Positions 15,791 through 58,400 of a DNA stretch of 64,000 bases are shown in pieces (the first letter of the stretch is position 1; each line of letters starts with the position of its first letter). Source of the DNA: Octopus bimaculoides (Eukaryota); the NCBI RefSeq assembly GCF_001194135.2, contig NC_068982.1, positions 100,013,333 through 100,077,332 on the forward strand, written 5' to 3'. A program made the translations under genes and the position numbers. The notes under the pieces were generated by a model. That model searched no databases and had not been told where the DNA came from. It worked only from the letters and a program-made list of their open reading frames with translations.

Positions 15791-15883
15791 ATATATATAT
15801 ATGCAAATATATGTGTGTATATATATATCATCATCGTCATATATATATATATATATATACAAACACATACATACATACATACA

Positions 15884-23140: not shown

Positions 23141-23598
23141 ACAACTCATACTGTGACCCACCTAACCACACTATTATGATAAAGAATAAGCAGTGAGTGG
23201 GGAGGGATGTTGTACTTATTACGTAACACTACTTGTGTTTTGCAGCTCCTTGACTCACTGTTCTGTGTGTTATTTTGTTACACAACTCAGAAGACCACAC
23301 CNNNNNNNNNNNNNNNNNNNNNNNNNNNNNNNNNNNNNNNNNNNNNNNNNNNNNNNNNNNNNNNNNNNNNNNNNNNNNNNNNNNNNNNNNNNNNNNNNNN
23401 NNNNNNNNNNNNNNNNNNNNNNNNNNNNNNNNNNNNNNNNNNNNNNNNNNNNNNNNNNNNNNNNNNNNNNNNNNNNNNNNNNNNNNNNNNNNNNNNNNNN
23501 NNNNNNNNNNNNNNNNNNNNNNNNNNNNNNNNNNNNNNNNNNNNNNNNNNNNNNNNNNNNNNNNNNNNNNNNNNNNNNNNNNNNNNNNNNNNNNNNNN

Positions 23599-23635
<37 letters not shown>

Positions 23636-24525
23636 GAGAGAGAGAGAGAGAGATACAGTAAATGTGTGTGTGTGTGCATGTGTGTGTGTGTGCATGTGTG
23701 TGTGTGTGTGCATGTGTGTATACTCACACACACGCACACGCATATATATTATCAGTTAGTTATCTGCAAGTCAGAAATAGGTATTCAATGAAAAATAGAC
23801 CAGTTATATTTTAATACATATAAAATGGGTGATCAATATTTCCACGTGTAATATTTTGTGTGAAACCTATGGTAATAACCTGACCAGTCATATGTCTTAA
23901 CTTATACTGCTCAACAATATAGAAATGTATATATTTTGTTTTTGTAATGTCACCCTCATCACTCATTATTTTTGCTTTGTGGATCCCTCACTCTCATACA
24001 GTAACTCTCTATGTTTGGTGTAGCCCTCGTCAGCAGTTCCACAGATTCTGGTCACAAAGGCAGACAGGAATTCATTTTCTGTCTTTAAACTTCCACTCCT
24101 CAATTGATTCAATCTTTTTCTGTAACACGCACATCATTACTCACACCCACATGCACTCAAATGCATGTAAAACCAAGCACACACACACACACACACACAC
24201 ACACATTGGTTCAGAAGCACTTGTCTTTCTACCCACTCACTTACCAACAGCATAAATATATATTTACACAGACACACGCACACACACTCATACACAATGA
24301 GATTCTAAAACCCTTTGTATCACACACACAATATGTCCAGAAACACACCAACTAAAACTTACACATACAGCCCTAACCCTATCACACACGCACTGATAGT
24401 TATAATGCACATATTCACATACTCAACATAACACTACAACACAAAATCCATCTAAACACATCTCATACACATGTATACGGATATGCACATGTATGCACAA
24501 ATACACATATATAAACATAGGTATA

Positions 24526-25638
24526 TTATCATCATCAACATTGATTAACGTCTGTTTTCCATACTGGCATGGGTTGGGTGGTTTGACTGAGGTCTGGAAA
24601 GCCAGCAGTTGCACCAGGCTCCAATCTGATCTGGCAATGTTTCTACAACTGGATGCCCTTCCTAATGCCAACCACTCTGAGAGTGTAGTGAGTGCTTTTT
24701 ATGTACCACCAGCACAAGGGCCAGTCAGGCAGCCTTGGCATCAATCATGTTTGGATAGTACTTTTTACATGTCACTAACATGGGAGCCAGTTAGGGGGAA
24801 CTGGCATCGACTGCGTTCACATGATGCATTTTACGTGCCACCAGCATGAGAGCTAGTCAGGTGGACTTAGCATCGATCACATTCGGATAGTGCTTTTTAC
24901 ATGCCTCTGGTATGGGAGCCAGTCAGGGACACTCGCGTTGACCACTTTTGGATGGTGCTTTTTACACACCACTGGAATGGGAGCCAGTCAGGGGGCACTG
25001 GCCACAGCTACGAATTTGGTTTTACTTGACTCAACAGGTCTTCTCAAGCATATCATATTGCCCGACACATCAAGAGTACTTTTAAATGAGCTGGGCATGC
25101 AACACTGGCATCGGCCATGGCTGTGATCTCACTTTAATTGCAGGGGCTTCTCAACCACAGCATATCTCCAAAGGTCTTGGTCTCCTGTTATTGCTTCTAT
25201 GAGACCCTATGTTCGAAGGTCATGTCTTCCCATGTCTTCCTGGGTCTACCTCTTCCACAGGTTCCTTCCATAGTTAAGGGTGTGGCACTTCCTCATACAG
25301 CTGTCCTCATCCATATGTAACATATGAGCAAACCAGTGCAGTCGTCTCTCTCTTGCACACATTTGATGCTTCTTTCTCTCAGGGCGCTCACACTCTGTCA
25401 TGTGTGCACACTGACATTACACATCCAGTAGATCATACTAGCTTCATTTCTTTCAAGCCTACACATGTCCTCAGCAGTCATGGCCCATGTTTTACTGCCG
25501 TGTAATACGGTAGTTCACACACATGCATCATACAGTCTACCTTTCATCCTGAGCGAGAGGCCCTTAGTTGCCAGCAGAGGTAAGAGCTCCCTGAACTTTG
25601 CCCAGGCTATTCTTATTCTAGCCGCTACACTCTCAGAG
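24526..25638 (-). mobile_element. 5'-truncated RTE-clade LINE: degenerate RT C-terminus, 3'UTR with ~65-bp subrepeats and (GAT)n tail
   Basis: Translation ...RIRIAWAKFRELLPLLATKGLSLRMKGRLYDACV...LHGSKTW...WMCNVSVH...RRLHWFAH... is an RTE-type post-RT region with stops and frameshifts. Confidence 0.9.
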
Positions 25639-31400: not shown

Positions 31401-33082
31401 AGAGTGCTACTTACAGAGCCATCTTGTTGGAAGTAAGATTCAATAAAGTTCTCTTCATGACAAGGGACAGCAGAAATGAGTTTACAGGCTCTGCAACATG
31501 TGGAGCATCATTTGTGGTCAATTTGATCATATTGCAGGTGTTACACTGGTGACCCCACCCCCTCCTCAAGCACTGCAATTTATGTTCTTTACATGAACAG
31601 CAGTGAATGAACCATTTAGAGGTTTGGGGACTTTGCTTGTATAAAAGATGTAGAAGGAGCATTCTGTTTAAAAGGAAAAAATTTTAACATATTTTTCAAT
31701 TTCAAATTTAACTCCAATTTCCTTTCTTCAGTGCAATTGGAAAAGCATTCTATATTTTAGGAATTAGAATTTGCCATGAAATTAAGAATAAATTGAAATT
31801 GCTTTTAGAGGAAAACTATAATCATTTTATTATATACTGAGGTAGCAAAGATATATGTGTGAAACAAAAATTCCTCTTTGAACTATATATATCATTTTTA
31901 CTGATAACTGATATAACAAGTTAAAATTTCAGTCGTATTTCTGAAAGGAATCATAGCAACATTTTCATGGATTTTTAAAATTTTCAAATTTCAACACCAA
32001 AATTACTGAACTTTTTTATTGGGCACAAGGCTAATTTTTCTTGATGTGAGATATATTCTACCGAATAAACCATGAAGTAATAAACAACAATGTCAGTTCA
32101 GCACAAATTAAACTTGGGAGTGTAATATGATAAATACTAAATAATGCAACAAGTCCAGTGCCCTACATCACTACCAACACACCAATGTCTACATGAAAAA
32201 TATTGAACATTGCTCAGACAGTTTTAGTTTTGCAGTTTTTCAAGAGGAAACAAAAAAAAAACTTCCAACTTGCTATGCTTGCAGAGTTGAACAAAATAAT
32301 TGATGGATTAAAATATTTTTATTAATTTTTTTTTAGGATGTTGTGATTAATGACAGTCTTAAATGATATGTACTTCAGATTTTTTTATGTGCCACAATAT
32401 ATTCATATAGTGTACAGCACATTATGCTGTAATCCCACATTATGCTACAGTCCCACATTATGCTACAAACACATAAATGTCATTTGCTAAATATGTGTGT
32501 GTGTGTGTAGGTTTATAGTGTAAATGAAATACAACTCTTCATCTATGAATGTTTGGTTAAACAGTAGTGGGGAGAGCCTGTTTATCTATGAAATAATGAC
32601 AATGTTTATGTATACCAATACCCTGGTACTTAAAGAGAAAAGAAAAGTTGACTATGTTATTAATATTTTGCTATACTCAGTATTCCTTGGTAATCTGTAT
32701 GTTCAATTGAAATGGTTAATGGCTAAATATTTATCAATTATAAGTTAGAGAGAGGGAGAAGAGACAGAGAGGGGAAAAAAGGGAAAGAAGGCAAAGAACA
32801 GATAGAAATAGAAGTTGTACGAATTTAAGCACTTGTGAATAAAATCGAGGGTATGTAGCATTCCATTAATTGATAAGTTGAAAAACATGTAGTAAATGCA
32901 AAAAAGTACAGAAAACAGACATAGGTCAGGAAGTCCACATCAGATATCGGCCTCACTAAATATTTATCAATTATAAGTTATCATGTAGACAGCTAAAATA
33001 ATAATACTGAGCTATTTTATCCATAGGGTTTTCTTCTCATAACCAATAATACAGGTGAAGCTAAATCCAGTATTTATATACT

Positions 33083-33486
33083 CTTTTACTTGTTTCAAGT
33101 CATTTGACTGTGGCCATGCTGGAGCACCGCCTTTTAGTCGAACTAATCGACCCCAGGACTTATTCTTTGAAAGCCTAGTACTTATTCTATCGGTCTCTTT
33201 AGCCAAACCGCTAAGTTACGGGGACGTAAACACACCAGCATCGGTTGTCAAGCGATGTTGGGGGGGACAAACACAGACACACAAACATATACACCCACAC
33301 ACACATATATATATATATATATACATATATATGACAGGCTTCTTTGAGTTTTCGTCTACCAAATCCACTCACAAGGCTTTGGTTGGCCCGAGGCTATAGT
33401 AGAAGACACTTGCCCAAGGTACCACGCAGTGGGACTGAACCCGGAACCATGTAGTTGGTAAGCAGGCTACTTACCACACAGCCACT
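33083..33486 (-). mobile_element. tRNA-derived SINE family B, near full length (central TA/CA microsatellite, 3' ...CAAATGACTGAAACAAGTAAAAGA)
   Basis: Head GGCTGTGTGGTAAG...GGTTCAGTCCC; matches copies at 15884-16277 and 37893-38295. Confidence 0.9.
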
Positions 33487-34549: not shown

Positions 34550-35373
34550 NNNNNNNNNNNNNNNNNNNNNNNNNNNNNNNNNNNNNNNNNNNNNNNNNNN
34601 NNNNNNNNNNNNNNNNNNNNNNNNNNNNNNNNNNNNNNNNNNNNNNNNNNNNNNNNNNNNNNNNNNNNNNNNNNNNNNNNNNNNNNNNNNNNNNNNNNNN
34701 NNNNNNNNNNNNNNNNNNNNNNNNNNNNNNNNNNNNNNNNNNNNNNNNNNNNNNNNNNNNNNNNNNNNNNNNNNNNNNNNNNNNNNNNNNNNNNNNNNNN
34801 NNNNNNNNNNNNNNNNNNNNNNNNNNNNNNNNNNNNNNNNNNNNNNNNNNNNNNNNNNNNNNNNNNNNNNNNNNNNNNNNNNNNNNNNNNNNNNNNNNNN
34901 NNNNNNNNNNNNNNNNNNNNNNNNNNNNNNNNNNNNNNNNNNNNNNNNNNNNNNNNNNNNNNNNNNNNNNNNNNNNNNNNNNNNNNNNNNNNNNNNNNNN
35001 NNNNNNNNNNNNNNNNNNNNNNNNNNNNNNNNNNNNNNNNNNNNNNNNNNNNNNNNNNNNNNNNNNNNNNNNNNNNNNNNNNNNNNNNNNNNNNNNNNNN
35101 NNNNNNNNNNNNNNNNNNNNNNNNNNNNNNNNNNNNNNNNNNNNNNNNNNNNNNNNNNNNNNNNNNNNNNNNNNNNNNNNNNNNNNNNNNNNNNNNNNNN
35201 NNNNNNNNNNNNNNNNNNNNNNNNNNNNNNNNNNNNNNNNNNNNNNNNNNNNNNNNNNNNNNNNNNNNNNNNNNNNNNNNNNNNNNNNNNNNNNNNNNNN
35301 NNNNNNNNNNNNNNNNNNNNNNNNNNNNNNNNNNNNNNNNNNNNNNNNNNNNNNNNNNNNNNNNNNNNNNNNN
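34550..35373. other. largest assembly gap (other gaps: 6072-6081, 16282-16653, 22348-22357, 23302-23598, 40636-41007, 44367-44775, 62102-62460)
   Basis: N runs, mostly bordered by (TA)n/(GA)n or inverted repeats. Confidence 0.99.
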
Positions 35374-35698
35374 NCTCTCTCTCTGTGAAAGTATCTGTCA
35401 CTACAGTATCGAAATGTGATTGTTTCAGTTAGTGGAATAGTTTCATTTTTAAAGTGAAAGTATTTGACATGAGTGTTTTTGTTTCACTTTTGACACGTAA
35501 TACTTAAATAGTGGAGGAGATATTATGTTGCCGTGTGCTCGAACTCTGCAAGAAGTTAATAATTTTTTTTGACTAAAACACAACTGGAACCCTAAGTAAG
35601 GCATGTGTAAAATTTGAATGAAATTGGTTGCGTAGTTCTCGAGTTTTAGGGATTCACACAGACAGACAGACAGACATTCTCATTTTCATATATATAGA
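35374..35698 (-). mobile_element. non-autonomous Helitron-like element, 5' part (3' end probably in the gap)
   Basis: A|TCTATATATATGAAAATGAGAATGTCTGTCTGTCTGTCTG...AACTACGCAACCAATTT, a typical Helitron-N/DINE-like 5' end with a (GTCT)n tract. Confidence 0.6.
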
Positions 35699-36030: not shown

Positions 36031-37623
36031 AGACACTTGCAGCATTACCACAAAATAGTGCAAGACTGAGATGCAGGAGCAGCCATGCACCCTCAAAAGC
36101 CTCGCCTGGCACAGATGAGGCAAGATGCAAAGAGGCTTAAAAAAATTCAAGTGTTTACAAAAGTTAAAAACTGAATAGGAAGCTGCAAACTAAATATCAA
36201 TTGATGCACTGGTCCCCAACACCTCTATAGACACAATTATGCTGAAAGATAATTGAAGGGAGGGTCACATGGCTTAAATTCTAGACTATAAAAAGACATT
36301 CTAGAAAACCACTAAAAAGCAACAACATTTTATAAAATAACATATCTGATGAAGAATCATTGGCATATCATTACTAACCAAAGTCTTAAACCCAACCAAA
36401 TGAAATTCTAGGTGCGGGCATGGGTGTGGAAAGAAGTTTGCTTCCCAACCACACAGTTCTGGGTTCAGTCCCATTGTGAGACACCTTGGGTAAGTGTCTT
36501 CAACTATAGTCTCAAGCCAACCAAAGCCTTGTGAGTGGATTTGGTAGACAGAAACTGAAAAAAGCCTGTCGCGTATTTGTGTGTGTGTAAGTGAGTGTGA
36601 CAATGTATGTTTGCATCGCCTTGATTTGACAACACATGATAGTTGTAAAATAATTGTCACTGCCATACAAGCAGCGTCATTCGTTTCCAATGTTCTATGA
36701 GAACATGTGGTAAATATTATCCTGTTTGGAAACAGGTGAGGTTTGGCTACAGAAAGGACGTATGGCAATAGAAAATTTGCCTCATTAACTCCACCTGACA
36801 CATACAAGCATGGAAAAAAATGGATGTTAAAAGGATGATAGATAGATAGATGGATGGATGGATGGATGCTGATAGTAACTTCTAAGTTTCACCATGGAAC
36901 ACCTTCATCCAAGTCTGATGAAGCCAGTACATGGGAAACTTCAAAATCATTCAATCTTTCTCTTATAAAGATAAGTTTTATATTCTAACGTATTGTGTGA
37001 CCTTTGCTTGACTTATTATATGTATGATCATACATAAAAAAAAAACACACACACACACACATAAGCATTCAGAACTATGTATGCCAGTAAATGCTTGAGT
37101 GAATGCATACATAGTGCTAAAAGGAGATCTAACACTCTCGAATGACTTCTGATGCATATTCACATGCTGAGACAGCACTCAATCAGTGTTTTTATCCTTC
37201 ATGTATTTGAATACCAACAGTTGTTCACACCAATCTTTATCTGTCCCTGAAAGAAACTCATATCTCAAACAAACATGTACAGACGTTTACACAAACACAT
37301 ACACTTTCTAATGAGTATCAATCATTACAATGGTTATTCACTCCATCATAGAGTTCTAGAATGAACTAGAATGCATTTAATGAGGCTATTTGATCTGCTA
37401 GAACCAGCAGTCTAATGTTCTTCAAATCATGCCCAATCTTTTTTCAACAAAGATTACATTGAACAAAATAGTCTATGATATACAAAAAAAAAAAAAAAGA
37501 CAGGATGATCATTGCTGGCCTGTTTGTTCAACCAGAGCTGGCCTGGAGACTAAACAACAATATATCATTACAGATATATACAATCATCAAATACTGTCAT
37601 GTTTCTATAACATTTAGACACCC

Positions 37624-37892: not shown

Positions 37893-38295
37893 ATTTATTC
37901 TTTTATACTCTCACTTGTCTGTCATTTTACCATGGCCATGCTGGAGCACCACCTTAAAGAGTTTTAGTCAAACAAATCAACTCCATGACTTATTCTTTAT
38001 AAGCCTAATACTTTATTCTATCAGTCTCTTTTGCCAAACTGCTAAATTATAGGGATATAAACACACCAACATTAGTTATTAAGCGATGGTGGGCAGACAG
38101 CAAATACAGACACATGGATATATATATCTACACACACATGACAAGCTCCTTTCAGTTTCCATCTACCAAATCCATTCACAAGGCTTTGGTCGGCCTGAGG
38201 CTATAGTAGAAGACACTTGCCTGAGGTGAATTGAGACTGAACCCAGAACCATGTGGTTAGAAGCAAGCTTCTTATCACACAGCCAGACCTGCGCC
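37893..38295 (-). mobile_element. family-B SINE
   Basis: Same architecture; abuts the mariner at 38302. Confidence 0.85.
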
Positions 38296-38301
38296 TATAT
38301 A

Positions 38302-39137
38302 CAAGGTCTGATCAATAAGTGTCCGGACTGTTGCCATAATAATGAAGCCGCTTGGCAAAGATTGACCTTGAACTCTGCTGTGCATGCGCACTAAGTTTTA
38401 ACATTCTAGCTCACTTCCGCTCCTTACAGCAGTGCTTGGAAGGAAGGTGTGTAGCATGTGATCATCACATTGACCATGACAGAGGAAGTTGTCATGGCGG
38501 TACTAGCTCAGAGGCCTAGGCAAAGTTGTAGAAAATGTATGGAGAGGAGTGTATGAGCCACACACAAGTGTTCAGATATTTCCAAGATGGCCAAAAAATG
38601 TTGATATTGATGAACGTTCTGGGAGACCCAAAACCAGCAGAACTGAGAAAAACATTACAGATGTGTGTGCAGCTGAGAGGGGAAATCATCGAATCACCAT
38701 CCATGAGTTACCAGAGGATGCGCAGATTAATTAAGGTTCAGTTCAGTCCATTATCAGTGAAGATTTGTGTATGAGACGCATGTCTGACCAAAAAGACACT
38801 CGGGTTTCAGTTGCACAAGATCTCCTTGATTGTATCGAGAAATGATGAGAGCTTTTTGAAAACTTTGTATAGGCCTCTGAGCAGGTATCGCCAAGCTTTT
38901 GACAAAATTTAACTCAGATTCTCTGCTCATCTTTCTCTATCATGGTCAATGCAATGATCACACGCTACACACTTTCCTTCAAAGCACTGCTGTTTACAGC
39001 AGAAGTAAGCTAGAATGTTAAAACTTAGTGTGCATGCACACCAAAGTTTAAGATCAAACTGTGCCAAGTGGCTTTACTCAGCATGCTTTAGCTTCGTTAC
39101 TATGGCAACAGTCCAGATACTTATTGATCAGACCATG
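38302..39137 (+). mobile_element. second copy of the same mariner derivative, opposite orientation
   Basis: Same TIR, same internal junction and deletion; right end abuts (GATG)n. Confidence 0.9.
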
Positions 39138-40615: not shown

Positions 40616-41299
40616 TATATATATATATATATATANNNNNNNNNNNNNNNNNNNNNNNNNNNNNNNNNNNNNNNNNNNNNNNNNNNNNNNNNNNNNNNNN
40701 NNNNNNNNNNNNNNNNNNNNNNNNNNNNNNNNNNNNNNNNNNNNNNNNNNNNNNNNNNNNNNNNNNNNNNNNNNNNNNNNNNNNNNNNNNNNNNNNNNNN
40801 NNNNNNNNNNNNNNNNNNNNNNNNNNNNNNNNNNNNNNNNNNNNNNNNNNNNNNNNNNNNNNNNNNNNNNNNNNNNNNNNNNNNNNNNNNNNNNNNNNNN
40901 NNNNNNNNNNNNNNNNNNNNNNNNNNNNNNNNNNNNNNNNNNNNNNNNNNNNNNNNNNNNNNNNNNNNNNNNNNNNNNNNNNNNNNNNNNNNNNNNNNNN
41001 NNNNNNNATATAATATATTAAAATGTAATTATTCTTTGGTTGTACCATATGCTTTTGATGATTACACAGTTTGGAAAATAACTGTCAGCTTTTGCTTGTA
41101 TCTGTACTTTCAAGATCAAATTTATTTTATTGATTGGAAGAATAAAAGTACCTAATAATGAACAGAAACTTTAAGTAGCTGTGAGACAAGAAAAACATTG
41201 TGTGAACCCAGAGAGCTACAAGGAATAAAATTATAGGAGCAAGGCAGGCTGCATCTATAAAACTCAAGAATCATAATTAGATAAACAACAAACAAATAT

Positions 41300-41458
41300 A
41301 CTATGTGGTTAAGAAGTTCGTTTTGCAACCATGTGGTTTTAGGTAAAGTCCCTCAGGAAAGCACCTTGAACAAGTGTCTTCTACTATATCTTTAGGTCAA
41401 CCAAATGTCTTATGAATGAATGTGGTAGATAGAAACTGTGCAGAAGCCCATTATATAT
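41300..41458 (+). mobile_element. family-B SINE head (host of the hammerhead tandem)
   Basis: Degenerate match to the head up to GAAACTG...AGAAGCCC followed by (TA)n. Confidence 0.7.
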
Positions 41459-41497
41459 ATATATTTACCTGCAGTTAAATATAGCTCTATGGGCGAT

Positions 41498-41557
41498 AGT
41501 CTGACGAGTTGTCCATAGAGCTAAAAGCTTTATGGATGCGAAACCATTGGTCACTCT
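41498..41557 (+). ncRNA. type I hammerhead ribozyme motif, canonical core (copy 1 of tandem pair)
   Basis: CTGACGA 41501-41507; stem II TCCATAGAGC/GCTTTATGGA closed by G41508-C41539; GAAA 41540-41543; stem III ACCA-T-TGGT; GTC triplet 41550-41552; stem I AGT/ACT. Confidence 0.85.
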
Positions 41558-41659
41558 ATGACCAGACATATATTTAACTGCATGTAAATACATTACTACT
41601 CTTACTTTTAGAGTGTGTTTCCTTTTTGGATATATGATCCACTGACTATATATATATAG

Positions 41660-41691
<32 letters not shown>

Positions 41692-41791
41692 ATATATATA
41701 TAAATCTTATTCTTTTGCTTACAAATTACTGACTGTAATGGTTTTCTACCTCCAGTTCAAGAGAGGTTGTATGTCCTCTCCTATCCATCTA

Positions 41792-41851
41792 GAGTCTGAC
41801 AAGTCGTCCATAAAGCTAAAAGCTTTATGGATGCGAAACCATTGGTCACTC
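41792..41851 (+). ncRNA. type I hammerhead ribozyme motif, G8A-mutated (copy 2 of tandem pair)
   Basis: CTGACAA 41796-41802; perfect 10-bp stem II TCCATAAAGC/GCTTTATGGA; GAAA 41835-41838; GTC 41845-41847; stem I GAGT/ACTC. Confidence 0.75.
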
Positions 41852-42086
41852 AATGACCGGACATATATTTAACTGCATGTAAATACATTACTGCTCTATA
41901 CTTTAGAGTGTGCTTCTTTTTCGGATATATGATCTACTGACGATAGACACACACACACACACGCATACTAGTCACTAACATCCATCACATGCATATATCA
42001 TACATATGCCTACATCACATATATGGTGCATACATCATATATGGTGGTTGTCTACTCCTTACACAGAGTTTGACCACCTCCTGCAC

Positions 42087-42300
42087 CTACACCTTAGCCC
42101 GTTCATGGCGTCTGATGTGGCTTTTTAAACCAGAGTGTTTTGAAAAAGCACCCACACAGATTGCACCTCTGATCTGCACTACCAATACCTGCAAGTAAGT
42201 TCTGCTCACTGTGGATCCTAACATGCCTTTTAAGACCCCCATTGGATTTGCAAGCCCTCTGGCACACGCCACATTCAAACGTGTGCACAGACATATAATC
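42087..42300 (-). pseudogene. two tandem C2H2 zinc-finger motifs with a frameshift (LINE C-terminus or ZNF fragment)
   Basis: FECGVCQRACKSNGGLKRHVRIH, then CNLCGCFFKT/(shift)SGLKSHIRRH, then stop; no splice context found. Confidence 0.6.
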
Positions 42301-42944: not shown

Positions 42945-43472
42945 CGAGACCTTTGGAAATATGCTGTGCGTGAGAAGACCTGGCAAGCCAAGTGAGACCT
43001 AAATCCAAGGCCTCTGCCAGGGGTGTAGCCAGCCCACTTATGCGTACCTTTCCTTCATTGGACACTAAACTCCGCTTGCGAAGACCTGTTGAGGCAAGTG
43101 AAATCGAAATCGTGATGGCACCTGTGCCCAGCGTCGCCTTTCTGGCACTTGTGCTCGTGGCATGTGTAAAGACTTTCGAGCGAGATCGTTGCCAGTGCCC
43201 CTGGACTGGTTCTTGTGCGAGTGGCACATAAAATACACCATTTTGAGCGTGGCCATTGCCAGTACCGCCTGACTGGCTTTCATGCTGGTGGCACCCACTA
43301 CACTCTCGGAGTGGTTGGCGTTAGGAAGGGCATCCAGCTGTAGAAACTCTGCCAAATCAGATTGGGGCCTAGTGTAGCCATCTGGTTTCACCAGTCCTCA
43401 GTCAAATCGTCCAACCCATGCTAGCATGGAAAGCAGACGTTAAACGATGATTGATTATGATGATGATGATGT
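42945..43472 (+). mobile_element. RTE LINE 3' end (ORF end ERDLWKYAVREKTWQAK*, 3'UTR, GAT tail)
   Basis: Contiguous ORF end and the same 3'UTR as 24526-25130. Confidence 0.85.
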
Positions 43473-44350: not shown

Positions 44351-44916
44351 TATATTTATATATATANNNNNNNNNNNNNNNNNNNNNNNNNNNNNNNNNN
44401 NNNNNNNNNNNNNNNNNNNNNNNNNNNNNNNNNNNNNNNNNNNNNNNNNNNNNNNNNNNNNNNNNNNNNNNNNNNNNNNNNNNNNNNNNNNNNNNNNNNN
44501 NNNNNNNNNNNNNNNNNNNNNNNNNNNNNNNNNNNNNNNNNNNNNNNNNNNNNNNNNNNNNNNNNNNNNNNNNNNNNNNNNNNNNNNNNNNNNNNNNNNN
44601 NNNNNNNNNNNNNNNNNNNNNNNNNNNNNNNNNNNNNNNNNNNNNNNNNNNNNNNNNNNNNNNNNNNNNNNNNNNNNNNNNNNNNNNNNNNNNNNNNNNN
44701 NNNNNNNNNNNNNNNNNNNNNNNNNNNNNNNNNNNNNNNNNNNNNNNNNNNNNNNNNNNNNNNNNNNNNNNNNNNTTAGTCCAGTTACCATGATAACATA
44801 TGTAAAAAGTTTACCTGTCGGGAAAGTTTATTGGAACACTAACATCTTTGTATAGCTAATTGGAGGAGGAGGAGGAAGAGGAGGAGGAGGGTGTAATGAC
44901 TATAGCAGACTGAGAG

Positions 44917-49400: not shown

Positions 49401-52400
49401 AACTAAATAGACTGAAACTGCATGAAAGCCTGTTGGAATGGCTGTATCTATTCTTATGAGATAAACTTAATCTGTCATCCATTTTAACACCAACCAGTTG
49501 GCCTTTGTATATCTTTAGCAAAGTTCACTGTTGCATAGATTTGGAGCAGAGTTCCAATCTGTGAATAAATAGTGATGTGTTAGGGTTTCTTCTTTCTCTC
49601 AAATACTCTTGGAGGGCCTACTAAAGGGTAGTGGGCACTGCCTTTCCTCTTCTGATTAAGCCTATAACATTTTTTTACAAATTGTTTTTAGAAAATTTCA
49701 TAAAATATTTTATAAAATTTTGTTATAAAAATTGGGGACTTACCTGGCACTGTGTTGTCAAGGAAGCAAGCTAAGGCACCACCAACAAAATTAGCATTTC
49801 CTAGCAATGTTTGTAATATGTTATTTAATTCTACATAACCTAAGTAATAAAAAAAATAGAACAGATAAGAATATTGATATTAAAACATGAAGTATACAAA
49901 TGCAGAATATTCTTTTCTACTCTAGGCACAAGGCCTGAAATTTTGGGGGAGGAGACCAGTCAATTAGATCAACCCCAGTATGCAACTGGTACTTAATTTA
50001 TCGACCCCGAAAGGATGAAAGGCAAAGTTGACCTTGGCAGAATTTGAACTCAGAACGTAAAGACAGACAAAATACTGCTAAGCATTTTGCCTGGTGTGCT
50101 AGCATTTCTGCCAGCTTGCTGCCTTACAAGTGCAGAATGTTAAACAGAATATTTGTATATCACCAATATTAAAACAGATTGAAAAGAATGTAATTATGTG
50201 TTATAGAATTTGTATTCTAACATTACTGCTTAGTAGTCTCTCTATAGCAAGACACTTGTGCTTGTTCTTCTATCATACATTAGCAGCATTTCAATGCCTG
50301 ACATAGAGCTATCTTCCCCTCTCAAATGCTTCCCAGTTTAGTAATGAGAACTTTTTCCTTTTCCTTTTGCCTTATTCTTTTTTTCTGCTTGCAAGTTATT
50401 TGGAAATTTCACTAGGACTAGTGGCACAAAAAAATGCATCCAGTACAATCTGTAAAATGGTTCGCATTAGGAAGGGCATCCGATCATAGAAACCATGCCA
50501 AAGCTAACAATGGAGCTTGATGTGGTCTTGTGGCTTGCCAGATGCTATCAACCTGTCCAACCCATGCCCACATGAAATGTGGATGGTAAATGATGATGCT
50601 GATGACGAGAACAAATGGTGAAGAAAAAATATATAAGAAAACAAATAACTTTTCTAAAATAAAAACTTAAGCAACTGATAACACTATATACTAAATAGGA
50701 AAAACTCAATGCGGGAGTCATTAGTCATTCAACTGGCTAGAAATAACAGTCAAATCTCCTTCAAATCACAGCCTACTTAAAAAGAGAAAGGATATTACAG
50801 GATGATATAGTCTTAAGTAATTCTAAAAAGATGGTTTTGTCCCAGCTGGAATGCTTTTAATCATAATCTGCTGGATTAGGACAGACTTTAGGTTAAAGCA
50901 ACAAAATATAAGAAACACATTTTCAATGAAATTAAATCCAAGTAAACGTACATGCAACTGTCTAACCAATCAATTTCTTGTTGAGCAAATGTGGGAGTTG
51001 CAACACAAATACTTTGACATGATAGACATAGCAGACAAATCTTTCTGACACTTAACCCTCTCACCTTAAGAAAATTCAGTGAGGTCAAATTGGATAATGT
51101 CATTCTAGACAAACTTTGTCTGAAAAATAAATGATATTGTCACAGCTGGAACATCAAATTAGATCATGTTATTCTAAACATACTCGATCTAAAACATAGA
51201 TGAAACGGTTACAACTGGGATGTCATTGATTATAGTTCTGATCAATCAGGGCTGACATATGGTTAGACAACACAGCTTCACTGGACAATTGTAGTTACTT
51301 CTATCTTTCACAAATACCAAGTTATTTGATTCTGTTCACACTTTAGATCAACTTCAGTAATTAACTGACAAATATTCACACATGTTTAATAATAAACTTT
51401 TATAATGTACAATATTCTACAATAAATGATAGTTACTTACAATGGATAAATCCATCAAAATGTTATATCATTTATTTCGGAGTATGCACAGTATACATTT
51501 CACTTTCATTATAAAATAGTATAATATATACGATATTTTGAAATTGTAACTCATAACAATTGCTGATTCTCTACAAAGCTCAAATGAAGATCCCAATAAA
51601 GTACTGCTCAATAAAGTACACCTGCATCCAGAGAAAGGTCACTGAACTAACTGGCATTAAATCACTAACAAATATGCTCCAGTTTCTGGTGTGCTGTCTT
51701 CTCTATCTATCTTTTCTATAGCTAGTACAATGGCCTGTGTTTTGCAAAAGTGGCTGGTCTCATACATCTTTTACTCAGGTACTCTTCATCTACTTGTATC
51801 CCCCTCTTTTTACCCTTGTTATGTCCATCCATGCCCTGATCCTGTAATAATATCAGCATTCTGGAAATTTCTCCTTGCTTATGTTTTTCTTGCAGCTACT
51901 GAACAGTAAAGGTCATGGGCATTGCCCTTCCTTCTAGATTCAGCAAGAAAAAGAAAATGACTAGGAACAATCTCTGAAGTACCAATAAAACAAAGATTAT
52001 TTCATTGTATTAATATTATTTCTAAGCTACTGACAAGCTAGAGCATATTCCTGCCTGTATAGTGTTGAGTAAGTGAGAGATAGGTGAGGGACATAGATCA
52101 CATAAATTAAGATACCTCTTGAAGGGAAGCAACTGAATAATTTAAAGAAAATGTAATATCTATTTTTTGACTTGCTTTTGGATAATATCCGTATTCTCAG
52201 TTGGTTATGCTAGGAAGTCTAGCAGAATAGTGTAATGACAGTTGCTCCTGATATGACCTTATGGAGGAGGTGCCTGAGAACTATACCCTTACAACCCTTC
52301 AAAGAACAGTGGGTAGTGAAAATGGATGGATGGGTCTTAGTACAACTTTTATTGATACTGAATGATGAAATAACATTTTAACTTAATACTGGTACAAAGA

Positions 52401-55400
52401 AAACTAAAGATTTCAAAAGAAGAAAATACTTACCTGTATCAAAAGGTTTTTTAGAGCTAGAAACATAATAGGGTACCATTAAACCAAACAAAAGTGAGAT
52501 GCCAATGATAGCTAAGTTGCGAGATGAGTTCATATCTATATACATCATGTTGGAGAGTACTAGACCAATAAAAATACCAAAACTGATAATTTGTACTCCA
52601 CCAAGTACAGGGTAAGGAATTATCACAAAAATTGCACCAAGTTTTCCAAGGACTCCAAATACAATGAATATGACGCCAACCATTTGAAATACTCGTCTGC
52701 TTCCAACCTAGAATATAAGAATATTTAATATATAAAGAATTGTTTTTAATATATTTTTTTGTTCAATTCACTCTCTGCTGTTCATGCTTTCAAATATATA
52801 ATGGCCAGCAATAATCTAAAATAACTACTTTCATATAGTTATAACATATAATCTTTAGAATTTGGCAAGTGGGTGGTCTCAGCAAAAATGAATCCAGTTA
52901 AAGGAAAAAATATGAGCTACAAGCAAAATAAAAAAAAAACTTTCTTGCTGGTAACATTAAAGCTTTGAATTTTACAGTTAAAAGTTGGAAGATCTCTCTC
53001 TGATGCAGTGGTAGCATACCCATCTACTCTATGATAGACACATGGTTCCATTCCAGTCAGTGACTTTGTCCACATTTTTCTGTGTGAGGGAATTATTGGC
53101 CATAGCTACACTGGCATTTAAGCAACTTTGTAAAAAGAGTCCAAATAAGTCTTAAGTGACATATGGGAAATATAAATTTAATAGTATGGAACTGCAGGAT
53201 ATAGTAAAACAAGTGATTTATTTACAAATTTTAATTATAAACTGTGGAAACTGAAAACTAATTTCGTCAGTAAATTCCAACTGGTTTTCATTGTTATTCT
53301 AACTTTCATCAACTGTTTATGGACAGAAATTATTGGTTTTGGGGCCCTCAAATTAAACAATTCAGGTGTAAGTTGTCATCGTCATCATCGTTTAATGCTT
53401 GTTTTCCATGCCAGCATGGGTTGGATGGTTTGAAAGGAGCTTGCCATGCTCCAATTGTCTGTTTTGGCATGGTTTTCACAGCTAGATGTCCTTCCTAATT
53501 TCGCTTCCCAACCACATGGTTTCAGGTTCAATCCCATAGTATGGCACCTTGGATAAATCAACAGAAACTGAAAGAAGTATGCTGCATGTGTGTGTGTGTG
53601 TGTGTGTATGCTGGTTGGTTGGTTATGCTAGGAAGTCTAGCAAAATAGTGTAATGACAGTTGCTTCTGATACGACCTTATGGAGGAGGTGCCTAAGAACT
53701 ATACCCTTACAACCCTTCAAAGAACAGTGGGCAGTGAAAATGGATGGATGGGTCTTAGTACAACTTCTATTGATATTGAATGATGAAATAACATTTTAAC
53801 TTAATACTGGTACAAAGAAAACTTTACAGAGTGTGCTGTATGCATTTATGTGGCACTGGCACAAGTGCATTGTACAAGGCACTGGCGCCTGCAAAGCAAA
53901 GACCTCTCAACTGAGAGAGGGTGAGGGAGGTATGGCCATAAAGGACATACCTATATGTATGGATGGCCATATGGTATGACAAGACATAGTATACATCAAT
54001 GAAAGACACACACATACAGAGATGAAGACTAAAACAGAGACAAAATGGAGGAATTTGATTAATCAAAAGTTTATATAGTGTAAAATATAATTAATAATTA
54101 ACCCATAAAGTGCTGGGATTTTCACTTACATAGCATGGGCTGCTGAGCACATTCTATGAAAATGAGACTATCGTACACACATAAAAAACAAAAAAAATAG
54201 TTAAAATATCTTCTTAGTATATAATGGTGGCAAGTTTTACATCATCCAAAAAGTCATTAGTTGAACTATTAGTCCTCTTGCATTCTGGGAACGAGGTGTA
54301 TCGGAGTATTTGAGTGACATTAGACCCCAACAAACGCCCATAAATTAAATGCATCTATCTGGGCCACAATCATGGCCTGTCGACCTGTGCCTGATGGCCA
54401 CAATCGTGGCCCGTAATGCTTTATGTGTTAAAACTATAAACAAATAAAACAAATACAAACAATTCAGTTATTGATTACCTTTGTTATTCCAATTGCTCCA
54501 ATGTTTCCTCCATAAGTGCTGGTGCCATGTCCAGCCCCAAAGGCCCCTGCAAGACAACTGGCAAACCCTTCAATCATGATACCACGGTTGACAGCATGGC
54601 TAGGAGGGGGTGGGAGACCACACATTCGAGCACATGCATAATAGTCCCCAATTGAATCAATGATAGACGTCATCGTAGCTATTATAAAACCAACAAATGC
54701 AGACGCTAGGAAACTAGGTGGACCAAACTGACCTGCAAAGTAAAAAGAAAAAAAAAAAAAGCGTTATCAGCCATTAAATTGACAACACAAATATAGATCA
54801 ATAAACAAGTAATGAATATCCATCGAGTTGAATCAACAAAGAATTTCTAGCAGAGCTAGAAACAGTAGACAAATCTTTCTTGTATCATATTGTACTATAT
54901 TGTCATAATGAAAGGAATAACTTTAGGGAATGTAGTGCTAAATACACTATGACTGAACCTACACACATGCATATACACACAAACACACACACACAAGTGC
55001 ACCTAGAGGTACAGGCATGATTGTGTGGTTGAGAATTTCGCTTTCCAACCACATGGTTTCAGGTTCAATCCCATAGTATGGCACCTTGGATAAATCAACA
55101 GAAACTGAAAGAAGTATGCTATGTGTGTGTGTGTGTGTGTGTGTGCACGTGCATGTATATATACGGCATGTAAATAGCACCATTTGAGCATGATCGTTAC
55201 CAGCGTCGCCTTACTGGCACGTTAGAAAATCGTTCGAGCGAGGTCATTGCCAGTGCTGCTGGACTGGCTCCTGTGCAGGTGGCATGTGAAAAACACCATT
55301 TTGAGCGTGGCTGTTGCCAGTACCGCGTGACTGGCCCTCGTGCCAGTGGCACGTAAAAGCACCCACTACACTCTCGGAGTGGTTGGCGTTAGGAAGGGCA

Positions 55401-58400
55401 TCCAGCTGTAGAAACTCTGCCATATCAGATTGGAGCCTGGTGCAGCCATCCGGTTCACCAGTCCTCAGTCAAATCGTCCAACCCATGCTAACATGGAAAG
55501 CAGACGTTAAACGATGATGATGATGATGTGTATCAGGTCACTTCTGAGCTCTCTCATGAATGCTATTGATAACATGGAATCTAGTACATCCTGTTGCTTG
55601 GTCGAGTTATTGGCAACTAAACTGGCACCCCCACTTGGCTAGCTTGGAGAGAAGGGTTGCTAGAAACCCAGCAGGACTAAAGACCAGACCTGTCAAAAGG
55701 ACAGATGAACCTAGTACAGGTTCAACGACTATATAGTAATAGCATGGATACTCAAAAATTCTGGACTGGTGTCTGGCATGCTGGAAGACCACTGGGAGTA
55801 AAGCATCCTTGCTAAAGCATATCTCTAGGAGAAGGTCAATTTGATATAATACTACATATACAGGGAATAGCATTGGAGATTTTGGGGATCTTTTGGTTGC
55901 CCTAGAAATCATGGCACTCCTACATTCCTGAACCTTTGACTGATATTAGCACTAGATATCTTGCTTTGACTCATCTCAGGATCATGTCAATAGGGTGGAG
56001 AGGGTCTATGAGGTGTTGTGCAAGTCTTATTAGACCTAAAATTTTGTACAGGCATTACTTTGTCAATGATGGTCATACTCATCTAACATGCCAACAGCCA
56101 TCATCATACATGTATGTGAGTGTGTGTGTACATTTGTGTCTCTGTCTTGACATAACACAATTGTTGTAAATTGTGCTATGTCAAGTTGTCTTGGCATAGC
56201 ACAATAGTTGTAAATTAGTGTAATTCTGCAAAAAACATGTCTGGCCATGGGGTAATATTATCTTGTTTGAAAACAGGTAAGGTTGGTGATAGGAAGAGCA
56301 TCTGGTCTTTGAAAAAGTCTCGATAAACTGCATGTAACTCATGCAAGTATTGAGGAGAAGGAGGACAACAAATGAGGATGAGATGACAATGATTCTTTTC
56401 TATACTTCCATGAGCCAGATGGAATTTGGTAGATGGTAGATTTTCCATGGTTGGATGCTCTTCTTGTTAACCAAGCAAGGAAATATTTTCTTACAGCTGC
56501 ATATATTTCCATGGAAGACTGGAAACGAAGAACACTGTTTGTGTAGTGGTGATGGTTATTTGTAATGATCACATGATATCAAGAAAAGGACACACAAACA
56601 CACATGCGCATATAATCACCATCATCATCATTTAACACCAGCTGGCATGAGTTGGATGGCTTTTTCAGTTTCTTTCTACCAGATATAATCACAAAGTTTT
56701 GATCAACCTGGGACTATAGTAGAAGACATTTGCTCAATGTACCACATAATGGGACTGAAAATGAAACCATGTGGTTAAGAAGTAAACCTATTAACAACAC
56801 AGCCATCTCTGCACACACACACATACACATATACACACACACATAAACATGCATCCATTTTTTTAAAAACAAATTATCATTTTTCCATGCCAGTGTAACG
56901 TTAGAAGCACCATTTTAGCGTGATTGTTGCCAGAGCAGCTGACTGGCTCCCGTGTTGGTGGCACATAAAAAAAGCACCATTCAAGCATGGTCATTGCCAG
57001 TGCCGTTGGACTGGCTCCTGTGCAGGTGGCACGTAAAAAGCACCATTTGAGCGTGGCTGATGCCAGTACCGCCTGACTGGCCCTTGTGCCGGTGGCACAT
57101 AAAAGCACCCACTACACTCTCGGAGTGGTTGGCATTAGGAAGGGGCATCCAGCTGTAGAAACTTTACCAGATCAGATTGGAGACTGGTGCAGCCTTCTGG
57201 CTCGTTGGCCCTCAGTCAAACCATCCAGCTCATGCCAGCAGGGAAAGCGGATGTTAAAAGATGATGATGATGATGATGATGACAGCAGTGGGGTATGAGA
57301 TATTTGTTCTTTTTAGAATCAGAAATGAGGGGGCCAAACTGTTAACATGCTAGGTACACTCAAGATAAATTATGGGATATCTCCAAATAAGTGTAATATC
57401 ATTCTCAATATTACTGCAGCTAGGGTATTCCTCTCCTGATTGTAAGGGTTGTGTGTTCGATTCCTTGTGACATGTTGTGTCCTTGAGCAAGGCACTTTAT
57501 TTTATGTTGCTCCAGTCCTTTCAGCTGGCAAAAATGAGTTGTGCTTGTAATTCAAAGGACCAGCCTTGTCACATTCTATGTCACACTGAATCTCCCTGAG
57601 AACTATGTTAAGGGTATGCATGTTTGTGGAGTGCTTAGCCATTTGCATATTTAATTTCACGGGCAAGCTGTTCTGCTGATCGGATCAAATGAAACATTCT
57701 TCATCATAACCAACAGAATGCCAGTTATTTCACCTGTAAAAAGCATTAAACAAATATATAACATAAGTAAAACAAGAGACAAACAATTATACATACCAGG
57801 ATATGGGAAATAAAACCAGGATGAAGAATGTACTACATGAAATCTGCTGTCTGTCCGAGCAAAGTACTGTGAGTTTTGAGGATTAGCAGACAAAACTCCA
57901 GCTTTGGTTAAGATGTCACTTAGAATCCAACCAAATATTATGGCAAACAGAATCTAGTAAACAGAGAACAGAATGACGATATTCATAATAACACACTGTA
58001 TGTAGAAATGTAGATTACAATAATGAAGATAATAATAGTGGTGATGATGAGTTTGGTGGCAGGGAAAACAACATTAGCATAATAATTATCATTTATCATT
58101 TTATTGATATAATGTGTGTGTGTGTGTGTGTGCGCGTGTGTGTGTGTATGTGCGTGCATGTGTGTGTGTATGTGCGTGTGCATGCGTGTGCTTATGCATG
58201 TCTGAGTACATGTGTACGTGTGTGTACCCTTGTCTTGACATCACATGTCAGTTGTAAAGAAGTATATTGTCCATTTCTAGTCATCTGTGAAGAATGTGTT
58301 GCTTGGAAACAAGTAAAGATTGGTAGCTGGAAGAACATCTGGCCATAGAAAATCTACCTCAACAAATTCTGTATGACCCATGCATGCATGGAAAAATGGA

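What the first reader, a model, noticed from the sequence alone, without database searches (positions are those of the whole stretch)
41462..41945. Tandem hammerhead ribozymes with a 295-nt period: candidate octopus retrozyme / circular-RNA template
Seen: two ~150-bp direct repeats, each starting with a type I hammerhead. Copy 1 has an intact core (CUGACGA 41501-07, GAAA 41540-43, GUC 41550-52), a long stem II (10-bp TCCATAGAGC/GCTTTATGGA) and a stem III ACCA-U-UGGU with a 1-nt loop, which suits a dimeric fold. Copy 2 has G8 changed to A at a CpG but a better stem I (GAGT/ACTC). Combining the two copies gives a 6-bp stem I TAGAGT/ACTCTA. Cleavage sites are 295 nt apart (41552, 41847). Short inverted copies of internal sequence form the 5' end, and the target is a SINE (TA)n tract. 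Established: metazoan non-LTR retrozymes are tandem monomers of a few hundred nt, each with a type I hammerhead, that yield linear and circular RNAs; Penelope-like elements carry hammerheads in their pLTRs. Inference: this is a genomic copy of a non-coding, self-cleaving retroelement RNA. I do not know whether this family has been described.
Basis: partly seen in the sequence, partly recalled or inferred. Interest (0 to 1): 0.88.

Follow-up and report, generated by a model that had tools for sequence, protein, structure and literature searches.

The report
Decayed hammerhead-ribozyme retroelement pair
Two copies, 295 bases apart, of a short non-coding repeat each carry a hammerhead self-cleaving ribozyme motif of the kind found in animal Penelope-like elements and retrozymes, but one copy has a dead catalytic core, so this is most likely an old, inactive relic of a known kind of mobile element.

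Summary
Two direct repeats (41498-41650 and 41793-41945) are 90-92% identical. Each begins with a type I hammerhead layout. Copy 1 has every invariant core base; copy 2 has G8 changed to A.

The motif is unlikely to be chance. No dinucleotide shuffle (0 of 300) gave a hit with helix II of 6 bp or more. My rough estimate is 0.07 chance hits or fewer in a 2.7-Gb genome.

Its shape matches the variant hammerheads of Penelope-like elements: a 14-bp helix II closed by G10.1-C11.1, a bulged base at the helix II base, a short helix I, and a palindromic helix III that is stable only as a dimer.

- No Rfam hammerhead model matches, even at E up to 10.
- Tandem Repeats Finder calls no 295-nt array; only about 1.6 units are present.
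- Copy 1 sits inside a (TA)n tract while copy 2 is followed by (CA)n, so two separate insertions fit as well as one tandem.
- The copies differ by neutral-looking transitions, four at CpG.
- No other copy is in the window or in any searchable collection.

Verdict: probable relic of a hammerhead-bearing non-autonomous retroelement, not an active circular-RNA template. It is a new member of a known kind. The octopus origin is unverified.

The parts
41290..41451 (+). SINE-like repeat that provides the (TA)n target tract
   Evidence: 41300-41452 matches at least 8 other copies in the window at 72-84% identity. Alignment by eye with those copies shows (TA)n(TG)n tails.
41452..41463 (.). (TA)n, 5' flank of unit 1 (start of the SINE tail)
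   Evidence: Read directly from the sequence.
41464..41646 (+). Unit 1 (183 nt), made of an inverted-repeat left arm, the hammerhead, the inverted-repeat right arm and a 58-nt tail ending ...GATCCACTGAC
   Evidence: nhmmer E=2.5e-62. BLAST gives 92% identity to unit 2 over 150 nt.
41464..41483 (+). Inverted-repeat left arm, read as the outer 'closing stem' of helix I
   Evidence: 19 of 20 bases complementary to 41569-41588. 41459-41590 folds at -52.1 kcal/mol, z=-8.1.
41496..41557 (+). Hammerhead copy 1: helix I 41496-41500 with 41553-41557; core CUGACGA 41501-41507; helix II 41508-41539 (G10.1-C11.1, bulged U41509, 13 more pairs); GAAA 41540-41543; helix III ACCAUUGGU 41543-41551; cleavage would follow C41552
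   Evidence: Sequence read. It is the only true-core descriptor hit in the window with helix II longer than 6 bp. All modelled pairs are standard pairs.
41569..41588 (+). Inverted-repeat right arm
41647..41702 (.). (TA)28 tract, either the 3' flank of unit 1 or internal to a 295-nt monomer
   Evidence: Tandem Repeats Finder: period 2, 28 copies.
41703..41744 (+). Spacer with no similarity to anything else in the window
   Evidence: BLAST finds only itself.
41745..41942 (+). Unit 2 (198 nt), with the same layout, a degenerate left arm and a 14-nt insertion before the hammerhead
   Evidence: nhmmer E=1.5e-69. Alignments. Left-arm identities of 15/20 and 14/20.
41790..41853 (+). Hammerhead copy 2: core CUGACAA 41796-41802 (A8 at 41801, inactivating); helix I TAGAGT with ACTCAA (4 bp, a mismatch, then 1 bp); cleavage site would follow C41847
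41943..41962 (.). ATAGA(CA)n tract following unit 2
   Evidence: Tandem Repeats Finder reports an AC repeat at 41947-41962. Sequence read.

Best explanation
The locus holds two decayed copies, in the same orientation, of a short (about 185-200 nt) non-coding retroelement unit.

The transcript of each unit carries a type I hammerhead ribozyme of the variant kind seen in Penelope-like-element pseudo-LTRs and animal non-LTR retrozymes.

Inferred mechanism for the ancestral element:
- It was transcribed as a multimer or read-through RNA.
- Two hammerheads paired through their palindromic helix III (ACCAUUGGU) to form a double hammerhead.
- Each cut after C17, releasing unit-length RNA. A host RNA ligase could circularise that RNA.
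- A Penelope-like reverse transcriptase/endonuclease copied it back into microsatellite DNA.

At this locus, unit 1 landed in the (TA)n tail of a SINE. Unit 2 lies 99 nt downstream of unit 1's 3' end. It arrived either in the same event as a partial tandem or as a second insertion.

Since then both copies have drifted neutrally. Copy 2 lost G8 through CpG decay. The locus should therefore no longer release a 295-nt RNA.

Shown here: the motif, the repeat, the flanks, the decay pattern, and the energetics that favour a helix III dimer.

Inferred, not shown: cleavage, circularisation, mobilisation by Penelope-like elements, and the existence of a family.
For: - All invariant hammerhead positions are present in copy 1 and in the right order: C3-A9, G12-A14, A15.1-U16.1 and C17.
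- Helix II has 14 standard pairs in both copies. Both substitutions within it keep pairing, U-G versus C-G and G-U versus A-U.
- The motif is rare by chance: 0 of 300 shuffles with helix II of 6 bp or more; decoy cores give 0.0014 per window at 10 bp or more; the rough genome-wide expectation is 0.07 or less.
- Helix III is unstable alone (0.0 kcal/mol) but gives -8.9 kcal/mol as a self-duplex. This matches the dimer mode described for metazoan type I hammerheads (PMC4209133, PMC7229834).
- The traits listed for Penelope-like-element hammerheads are present: a large helix II, a short helix I, G10.1-C11.1 and a palindromic 15.2-16.2 segment. An unpaired base lies at the 5' base of helix II, but one position further in than described.
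- The context fits. GC is 33%. The largest ORF is 44 aa. The HH-to-HH spacing of 295 nt lies within the 170-400 nt range for retrozymes. The insertion is in (TA)n, a target bias reported for Penelope-like elements.
- A 20-bp closing stem beyond helix I is present in both units.
- The hypothetical 295-nt circle folds well: -73.4 kcal/mol, z=-6.6; without the (TA)n tract, z=-4.1.
Against: - No Rfam hammerhead family (Hammerhead_1, HH9, HH10, II or 3) matches, even at E up to 10 on 79 nt.
- Helix I is only 3-4 contiguous pairs.
- Helix II is far longer than the 4-8 bp described for these hammerheads, so the usual loop 1-loop 2 contact cannot be recognised.
- The nearest-neighbour energy of the hammerhead fold is well above the minimum free energy for copy 1 (-12.2 versus -23.7 kcal/mol). 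In copy 1, 41484-41497 can also pair with the 5' strand of helix II.
- Only two copies exist in 64 kb, and none in metagenome, prokaryote or viral collections.
- With two sequences there is no compensatory covariation.
- No Penelope-like-element ORF adjoins the units. The rest of the window was not searched for one.
- The hammerhead region has diverged about as much as the rest of the unit, so there is no sign of selection.
Confidence: 0.68

Rival explanations
1. One reading: this is a live tandem non-LTR retrozyme. The transcript of the locus is cut at both hammerheads, after 41552 and 41847, and gives a 295-nt linear and circular RNA.
For: - Two hammerhead layouts lie 295 nt apart in the same orientation.
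- Spacing and GC content fall in the retrozyme range.
- Helix III suits a dimer.
- The 295-nt circle is predicted to be well paired.
Against: - Copy 2 has A8 with C3. This is an inactivating core change, not the U3-A8 covariant.
- In the double hammerhead, the intact core gets a 3-bp helix I, and the 6-bp helix I goes with the dead core.
- Only 153-190 of the 295 nt are repeated, and Tandem Repeats Finder calls no array.
- Under the working definition in bioRxiv 10.64898/2026.07.22.740005, an active retrozyme needs a tandem repeat found by that program with a complete hammerhead in at least two consecutive units. Neither condition is met here.
- The copy differences are neutral-looking transitions, four at CpG.
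Confidence: 0.1
2. The hammerhead resemblance is coincidental. The unit is a foldback or MITE-like inverted-repeat element, or some other repeat whose central hairpin happens to be flanked by CTGACGA and GAAA.
For: - The first 125-145 nt of each unit form an imperfect palindrome. nhmmer reverse-strand self hits have E=7e-10 and 7e-6, and the fold has z=-8.1.
- 41464-41588 has 19/20 inverted ends with TA on both sides, and mariner-like transposase fragments are present in the window.
- No covariance model matches.
- A loose descriptor does give one clear false hit elsewhere in the window, at 31731-31690.
Against: - The shared unit runs 58 nt past the right inverted repeat at about 90% identity, so the inverted repeats are not the element's ends.
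- Copy 2 lacks a TA on its left side.
- Getting both core boxes, G10.1-C11.1, a 9-nt palindromic helix III, U16.1-C17 and a helix I around a non-microsatellite hairpin is expected 0.07 times or fewer per genome.
- Decoy cores rarely score.
Confidence: 0.17
3. The ribozyme ancestry is real, but the pair is not a tandem from one retrotransposition event. It is either two independent insertions of a SINE-like hammerhead monomer (or solo Penelope-like-element pseudo-LTR fragment) into a microsatellite-rich spot, or a local DNA duplication of one insertion. This is a sub-question of the best explanation, which leaves the arrangement open.
For: - Unit 1 has (TA)n on both sides, as if it split the SINE tail. 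Unit 2 is followed by ATAGA(CA)n and preceded by unrelated sequence.
- Both units share the same 5' and 3' ends.
- The 42-nt spacer matches nothing else in the window.
- Most minimal hammerheads in animal genomes are dispersed single motifs, probably from truncated Penelope-like elements.
Against: - Two insertions of an element otherwise absent from 64 kb, within 100 nt and in the same orientation, would be a coincidence unless targeting is strong.
- Penelope-like elements typically insert as partial tandems.
- A 1.6-unit tandem also gives shared ends by construction.
Confidence: 0.4

Closest known systems
Minimal or variant type I hammerheads of Penelope-like elements (Cervera and de la Pena 2014, PMC4209133)
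   Same: - Type I topology.
- Helix II larger than usual, closed by G10.1-C11.1.
- An unpaired base at the 5' base of helix II.
- A short helix I.
- A palindromic helix III segment that points to action as a dimer.
- No recognisable loop-loop contacts.
- Many genomic copies of these hammerheads are dispersed and lie away from any ORF.
   Different: - Helix II here is 14 bp, against 6-8 bp described.
- The bulge lies after 10.1, not between 9 and 10.1.
- Helix III has a 9-nt palindrome rather than none or 2-4 nt.
- The two hammerheads flank about 240 nt of non-coding DNA, not a reverse transcriptase/GIY-YIG ORF.
- No Penelope-like-element ORF adjoins the units; the rest of the window was not searched for one.
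Metazoan non-LTR retrozymes (Cervera and de la Pena 2020, PMC7229834; Li et al. 2026, bioRxiv 10.64898/2026.07.22.740005)
   Same: - Non-coding and AT-rich.
- A type I hammerhead in each unit.
- A 295-nt spacing between hammerheads, within the 170-400 nt range.
- A weak helix III that needs a dimer, as in newt and axolotl.
- A predicted well-paired circle.
   Different: - Retrozymes are true tandem arrays, from dimers up to 62-mers, of whole units. Most carry canonical hammerheads with a 6-bp helix I, a 4-bp helix II and loop-loop contacts.
- Here only about 1.6 units are present and Tandem Repeats Finder calls no array.
- One core is dead.
- Expression and copy number are unknown.
Schistosoma Sm-alpha and newt satellite 2 hammerhead repeats
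   Same: Short SINE-like or satellite repeats of about 330 nt with a type I hammerhead. The newt ribozyme works as a double hammerhead. This comparison rests on the account given in PMC7229834.
   Different: Those families have thousands of copies, canonical short helix II with tertiary contacts, and match Rfam Hammerhead_1. This sequence does not match that model.

Membership tests
Hammerhead ribozyme, type I | Invariant core: C3 U4 G5 A6 N7 G8 A9, G12 A13 A14, the A15.1-U16.1 pair, and H17 not G | tested here: met
   Copy 1 has CUGACGA, GAAA, A41543-U41551 and C41552. Copy 2 fails at position 8 (A41801).
Hammerhead ribozyme, type I | Three helices around the core, with helix I open and helices II and III closed by loops | tested here: met
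   - Helix II has 14 pairs in both copies.
- Helix III is 3 bp with a 3-nt loop (0.0 kcal/mol alone, -8.9 kcal/mol as a duplex).
- Helix I has 3-4 contiguous pairs and is weak.
Hammerhead ribozyme, type I | Match to a curated covariance model (Rfam Hammerhead_1, HH9, HH10) | tested here: not met
   No hammerhead family is reported at the gathering score on the window, nor at E up to 10 on 601 nt or 79 nt. The 32-nt helix II hairpin and the tiny helix III are likely reasons; that is my inference.
Hammerhead ribozyme, type I | Tertiary contact between loop 1 and loop 2 | tested here: inconclusive
   Checked by eye only. Helix II is 14 bp, so loop II lies far from helix I. A 12 x 11-nt internal loop follows helix I, but I recognised no known contact motif.
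Hammerhead ribozyme, type I | Site-specific self-cleavage after position 17 | not testable with these tools
   This needs in vitro transcription and cleavage assays.
Hammerhead ribozyme, type I | Covariation that supports the helices across family members | tested here: inconclusive
   Only two sequences are available. There are no changes on both sides of a pair, and two one-sided changes that keep pairing in helix II.
Metazoan non-LTR retrozyme | Head-to-tail tandem array of whole monomers (about 170-400 nt), each with a complete type I hammerhead | tested here: not met
   Tandem Repeats Finder finds no array with a period near 295. Only 153-190 nt of the 295 are repeated. Copy 2 has an incomplete core.
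Metazoan non-LTR retrozyme | Non-coding, low GC (below 45-50%), with no LTR, primer binding site or polypurine tract | tested here: met
   GC is 33% over 41464-41945. The largest ORF is 44 aa. The absence of LTR features was judged by eye only.
Metazoan non-LTR retrozyme | A multi-copy family in the genome | not testable with these tools
   There are only 2 copies in the 64-kb window. The source genome is in none of the searchable collections.
Metazoan non-LTR retrozyme | Expression as unit-length linear and circular RNA | not testable with these tools
   No transcriptome data can be reached.
Penelope-like element pseudo-LTR hammerhead | Hammerheads lie in direct repeats that flank a reverse transcriptase plus GIY-YIG ORF | tested here: not met
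   The 243 nt between the cleavage site of hammerhead 1 and the core of hammerhead 2 are (TA)n plus non-coding sequence. Six-frame reading of 38-46 kb by eye shows no reverse-transcriptase-like ORF next to the units. No profile search was run on those frames.
Penelope-like element pseudo-LTR hammerhead | Variant architecture: a large helix II, a short helix I, an unpaired base at the 5' base of helix II, G10.1-C11.1, and a palindromic 15.2-16.2 segment with loop 3 | tested here: met
   All are present, judged against the descriptions in PMC4209133. The bulge position is shifted by one, and helix II is longer than described.
Penelope-like element pseudo-LTR hammerhead | Insertion bias for microsatellites, and partial-tandem or inverted structures | tested here: inconclusive
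   Unit 1 is flanked by (TA)n on both sides, and unit 2 is followed by (CA)n. The inverted segment is internal to both units, so it is not a junction feature. The literature basis is PMC8557442.

The most novel reading that the evidence does not exclude
This locus is a fossil of an undescribed cephalopod (or other mollusc) family of hammerhead retroelements with an unusual ribozyme. That ribozyme has a 14-bp helix II, a 9-nt palindromic helix III, and a helix I extended by a large internal loop and a 20-bp closing stem. Younger copies of the family elsewhere in the genome would still self-cleave as dimers and accumulate as small circular RNAs.
Probability: 0.25. Interest if true: 0.5.

Novelty: new member of a known kind. 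Interest (0 to 1): 0.3.

Why it matters
If the ribozyme ancestry is real, hammerhead-bearing non-autonomous retroelements extend to a lineage where the papers I could search describe none. 'Retrozyme' with 'octopus' gave only incidental mentions.

It would also add a structural variant: a very long helix II, which Rfam models miss. That is a reminder that covariance-model screens undercount hammerheads of the Penelope-like-element type.

The locus itself looks dead, so the value lies in pointing to a family worth a genome-wide and transcriptome-wide search. The principle is not new. Hammerheads in animal repeats, dimeric cleavage and circular-RNA intermediates are all established.

Tried and rejected
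- **Rfam at three scales:** no hammerhead hit. The only hits were weak (TA)n-driven miRNA-like matches and one chance 17-nt match.
- **Metagenome scan** for CTGAYGAG...CGAAACCATTGGTC: 8 hits, about the number I estimated for chance. They are mostly GC-rich prokaryote-like contigs and none shows the hammerhead helices.
- **Prokaryote-genome and viral-contig scans** with a 21-mer from the ribozyme: 0 hits.
- **Protein route to other copies:** I searched the 61-aa open frame on the minus strand of unit 1 against 5.8 billion proteins. No candidate was found.
- **Organism identification:** the Xan_ur_permease exon gave best hits of only 63-66% identity, from metagenomes. Sequence strings of the ribozyme and of the SINE were searched in full-text papers, with 0 papers found. 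ARAGORN on the window found 0 tRNA-like genes. The 'octopus' label therefore stays unverified.
- **BLAST (word size 7) and nhmmer --max** of the units against the window: no third copy.
- **Variant-core scan:** a search for minimal hammerheads and U3-A8 variants elsewhere in the window found none.
- **MITE reading:** considered and largely rejected, because the shared unit runs 58 nt beyond the right inverted repeat.
- **miRNA-type hairpin:** rejected. The 14-bp hairpin is too short, and the longer 132-nt hairpin is not kept in copy 2 (z=-3.5 against -8.1).
- **Pfam** on nine ORFs of the window: only the permease exon scored.
Full report
**1. What is there**

The sequence at 41440-41965 reads, in order:
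- the 3' end of a SINE-like repeat that has at least 8 copies in the window;
- its (TA)n tail, 41452-41463;
- unit 1, 41464-41646;
- (TA)28, 41647-41702;
- a 42-nt spacer, 41703-41744, that matches nothing else in the window;
- unit 2, 41745-41942;
- ATAGA(CA)n.

The high-identity repeat is 41498-41650 against 41793-41945. It is 153 nt long, 90-92% identical, and offset by 295 nt.

Homology most likely continues 5' to a 20-nt segment at 41464-41483 in unit 1 and 41745-41764 in unit 2. The two segments match at 15 of 20 bases, a level reached by 21 of 5000 random stretches. Unit 2 has a 14-nt insertion before the ribozyme.

BLAST with 7-nt words and nhmmer --max find no third copy in the 64 kb.

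**2. The hammerhead layout**

Copy 1 has every invariant position in the right order:
- C3-A9 = CUGACGA (41501-41507);
- G12-A14 plus A15.1 = GAAA (41540-41543);
- the A15.1-U16.1 pair (41543-41551);
- C17 = 41552.

The three helices are as follows:
- **Helix II.** G41508-C41539 forms the conserved G10.1-C11.1 pair. U41509 is bulged, and 13 further standard pairs lead to a 5-nt loop.
- **Helix III.** The segment is ACCAUUGGU. A 1-nt loop is not feasible, so as a monomer it is 3 bp with a 3-nt loop, predicted at 0.0 kcal/mol. Two copies of the 9-mer pair at -8.9 kcal/mol.
- **Helix I.** It has 3 pairs, a mismatch and 1 pair in copy 1. In copy 2 it has 4 pairs, a mismatch and 1 pair.

Beyond helix I lie a 12 x 11-nt internal loop and a 20-bp closing stem that matches at 19 of 20 bases. 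The closing stem is also present, degraded, in unit 2.

Copy 2 has CUGACAA. Its A8 faces C3, so it is not the U3-A8 covariant reported in Schistosoma Penelope-like elements.

**3. Is it chance?**

- A descriptor with copy 1's minimum criteria gives 0.02 hits per dinucleotide-shuffled window. It gives 0 in 300 shuffles with helix II of 6 bp or more.
- On the real window, 719 permuted decoy cores give 0.035 hits per window with helix II of 4 bp or more, and 0.0014 with 10 bp or more. The single hit at 10 bp or more lies in a (TG)n tract.
- The true core also gives one obvious false hit in AT-rich DNA at 31731-31690 when helix II is short. Loose hits alone therefore mean little.
- I also conditioned on non-microsatellite hairpins of 12 bp or more, of which there are 17 in the window. 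From base composition, the chance that one is flanked by both boxes, a palindromic helix III, U-H and a 3-bp helix I is 2e-9 to 5e-8. That gives 0.004-0.07 expected in 2.7 Gb.
- I conclude that the motif descends from a real hammerhead, with about 0.8 probability.

**4. Evidence against, or missing**

- No Rfam hammerhead family matches at the gathering score or at E up to 10, even on 79 nt.
- I weigh it as a real negative, softened by the literature. Hammerheads of Penelope-like elements escaped canonical descriptors for the same structural reasons: a large helix II, a missing or tiny helix III, and no loop-loop contacts.
- The nearest-neighbour energy of the hammerhead fold is -12.2 against a minimum of -23.7 kcal/mol for copy 1, and -18.6 against -21.9 for copy 2.
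- In copy 1, 41484-41497 can pair with the 5' strand of helix II.
- With two sequences there is no covariation. Both changes in helix II are one-sided and keep pairing, which has a prior chance of about 25% by my estimate.
- The copies differ by 11 substitutions and 2 indels in about 150 nt. Ten of the 11 substitutions are transitions and four are CpG to TpG/CpA changes, including G8A. The differences are spread evenly over ribozyme and non-ribozyme parts.
- This pattern is neutral decay, not maintenance.

**5. Which known kind?**

The description of Penelope-like-element hammerheads fits well (PMC4209133). It lists:
- a helix II larger than usual;
- a helix I of 4-5 bp or shorter;
- an unpaired base at the 5' end of stem II;
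- a conserved G10.1-C11.1;
- a palindromic 15.2-16.2 segment and loop 3;
- low or no activity as a monomer.

Canonical retrozyme hammerheads have a 6-bp helix I, a 4-bp helix II and loop-loop contacts. They fit less well.

The context fits a non-autonomous element:
- no ORF above 44 aa;
- GC of 33%;
- a 295-nt spacing, within the 170-400 nt range;
- microsatellite flanks, which match the (TA)n/(CA)n insertion bias reported for Penelope-like elements.

The locus fails the operational retrozyme definition, which requires a tandem array found by Tandem Repeats Finder with a complete hammerhead in at least two consecutive units. It also fails the definition of a Penelope-like element, because there is no ORF between the repeats.

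**6. One event or two?**

Unit 1 has (TA)n on both sides, as if it split the SINE tail. Unit 2 has unrelated sequence upstream and ATAGA(CA)n downstream. That favours separate insertions, or a later insertion of unit 1.

Against this, two copies of an element otherwise absent from 64 kb, 99 nt apart and co-oriented, favour one partial-tandem event of the kind typical of Penelope-like elements. I cannot decide this with the data in reach.

**7. Can the locus work now?**

This section is inference from the double-hammerhead model cited in PMC4209133.

In a dimer, each active site combines the core and 5' helix I strand of one copy with the cleavage strand of the other.
- Core 1, which is intact, would face site 41847 with a 3-bp helix I.
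- Core 2, which carries A8, would face site 41552 with a 6-bp helix I.
- At best one weak cut is expected, so no 295-nt unit and no circle should arise from this locus.
- The hypothetical 295-nt circle would be well paired: -73.4 kcal/mol with z=-6.6, and z=-4.1 without the (TA)n tract.

**8. Search for relatives and for the organism**

- The metagenome scan gave 8 hits, about the number I estimated for chance, and none shows the hammerhead helices.
- The prokaryote and viral scans gave 0 hits.
- The protein route found no candidate.
- The permease exon at 52378-52683(-) has only 63-66% relatives.
- No paper holds the ribozyme or SINE strings.
- 'Octopus' is plausible from my own knowledge, given low GC, a heavy SINE and microsatellite load, and C2H2-like debris. 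It is not verified.
- Full-text search finds no described cephalopod retrozyme. Cephalopods are reported to hold Penelope-like-element (Naiad) remnants.

**9. Verdict**

The best reading (0.68) is a decayed pair of units from a hammerhead-bearing, non-autonomous retroelement of the Penelope-like-element or retrozyme type. It is a new member of a known kind, it is inactive at this locus, and its interest is modest (0.3).

The more exciting reading needs the genome-wide and RNA tests listed under next steps.

Noticed in passing
41290-41451; also 15887-16034, 36431-36557, 38153-38219(-), 33347-33420(-), 56666-56740(-), 10656-10734, 55024-55088, 53497-53551: An abundant SINE-like repeat with at least 8 copies in 64 kb, 72-84% identical, with (TA)n(TG)n tails. 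ARAGORN sees no tRNA-like head.
   Followed up: partly
5332-5646(-), 16712-17086(-), about 38100-38900(+): ORF fragments that look like mariner/Tc1 transposase by eye. Pfam reported none at E up to 0.01.
   Followed up: partly
15564-16016(+), 24493-24849(+), 43065-43391(-): A repeated ORF-like family sharing 'KPDGYTR.QSDLAEF.QLDALPNANHSESVV'. It partly overlaps SINE copies and is probably another interspersed repeat.
   Followed up: no
about 42100-42300(-): Frameshifted reading frames that resemble C2H2 zinc fingers ('FECGVCQRACKSNGGLKRHVRIH', 'CVGAFSKHSGLKSHIRRHE'), directly downstream of hammerhead copy 2. Likely a pseudogene or transposable-element fragment.
   Followed up: no
52378-52683(-): An exon of a nucleobase/ascorbate transporter (Pfam Xan_ur_permease, E=2.5e-14). 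The nearest database proteins are only 63-66% identical, so the source organism is not represented in the protein collection.
   Followed up: partly
31690-31731(-): An AT-rich match to a loose hammerhead descriptor (CTGAAGA ... GAAA, 6-pair helix II). It looks like chance and shows the false-positive level of loose descriptors.
   Followed up: yes
41484-41497 with 41508-41521: In copy 1 only, the segment just upstream of the hammerhead pairs with the 5' strand of helix II over 14 bp. This alternative fold would compete with the active one. It is absent in copy 2.
   Followed up: partly
6072-6081, 16282-16653, 22348-22357, 23302-23598, 34550-35374, 40636-41007, 44367-44775, 62102-62460: Eight assembly gaps (runs of N), several of them next to microsatellite tracts. 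The window comes from a draft scaffold.
   Followed up: no
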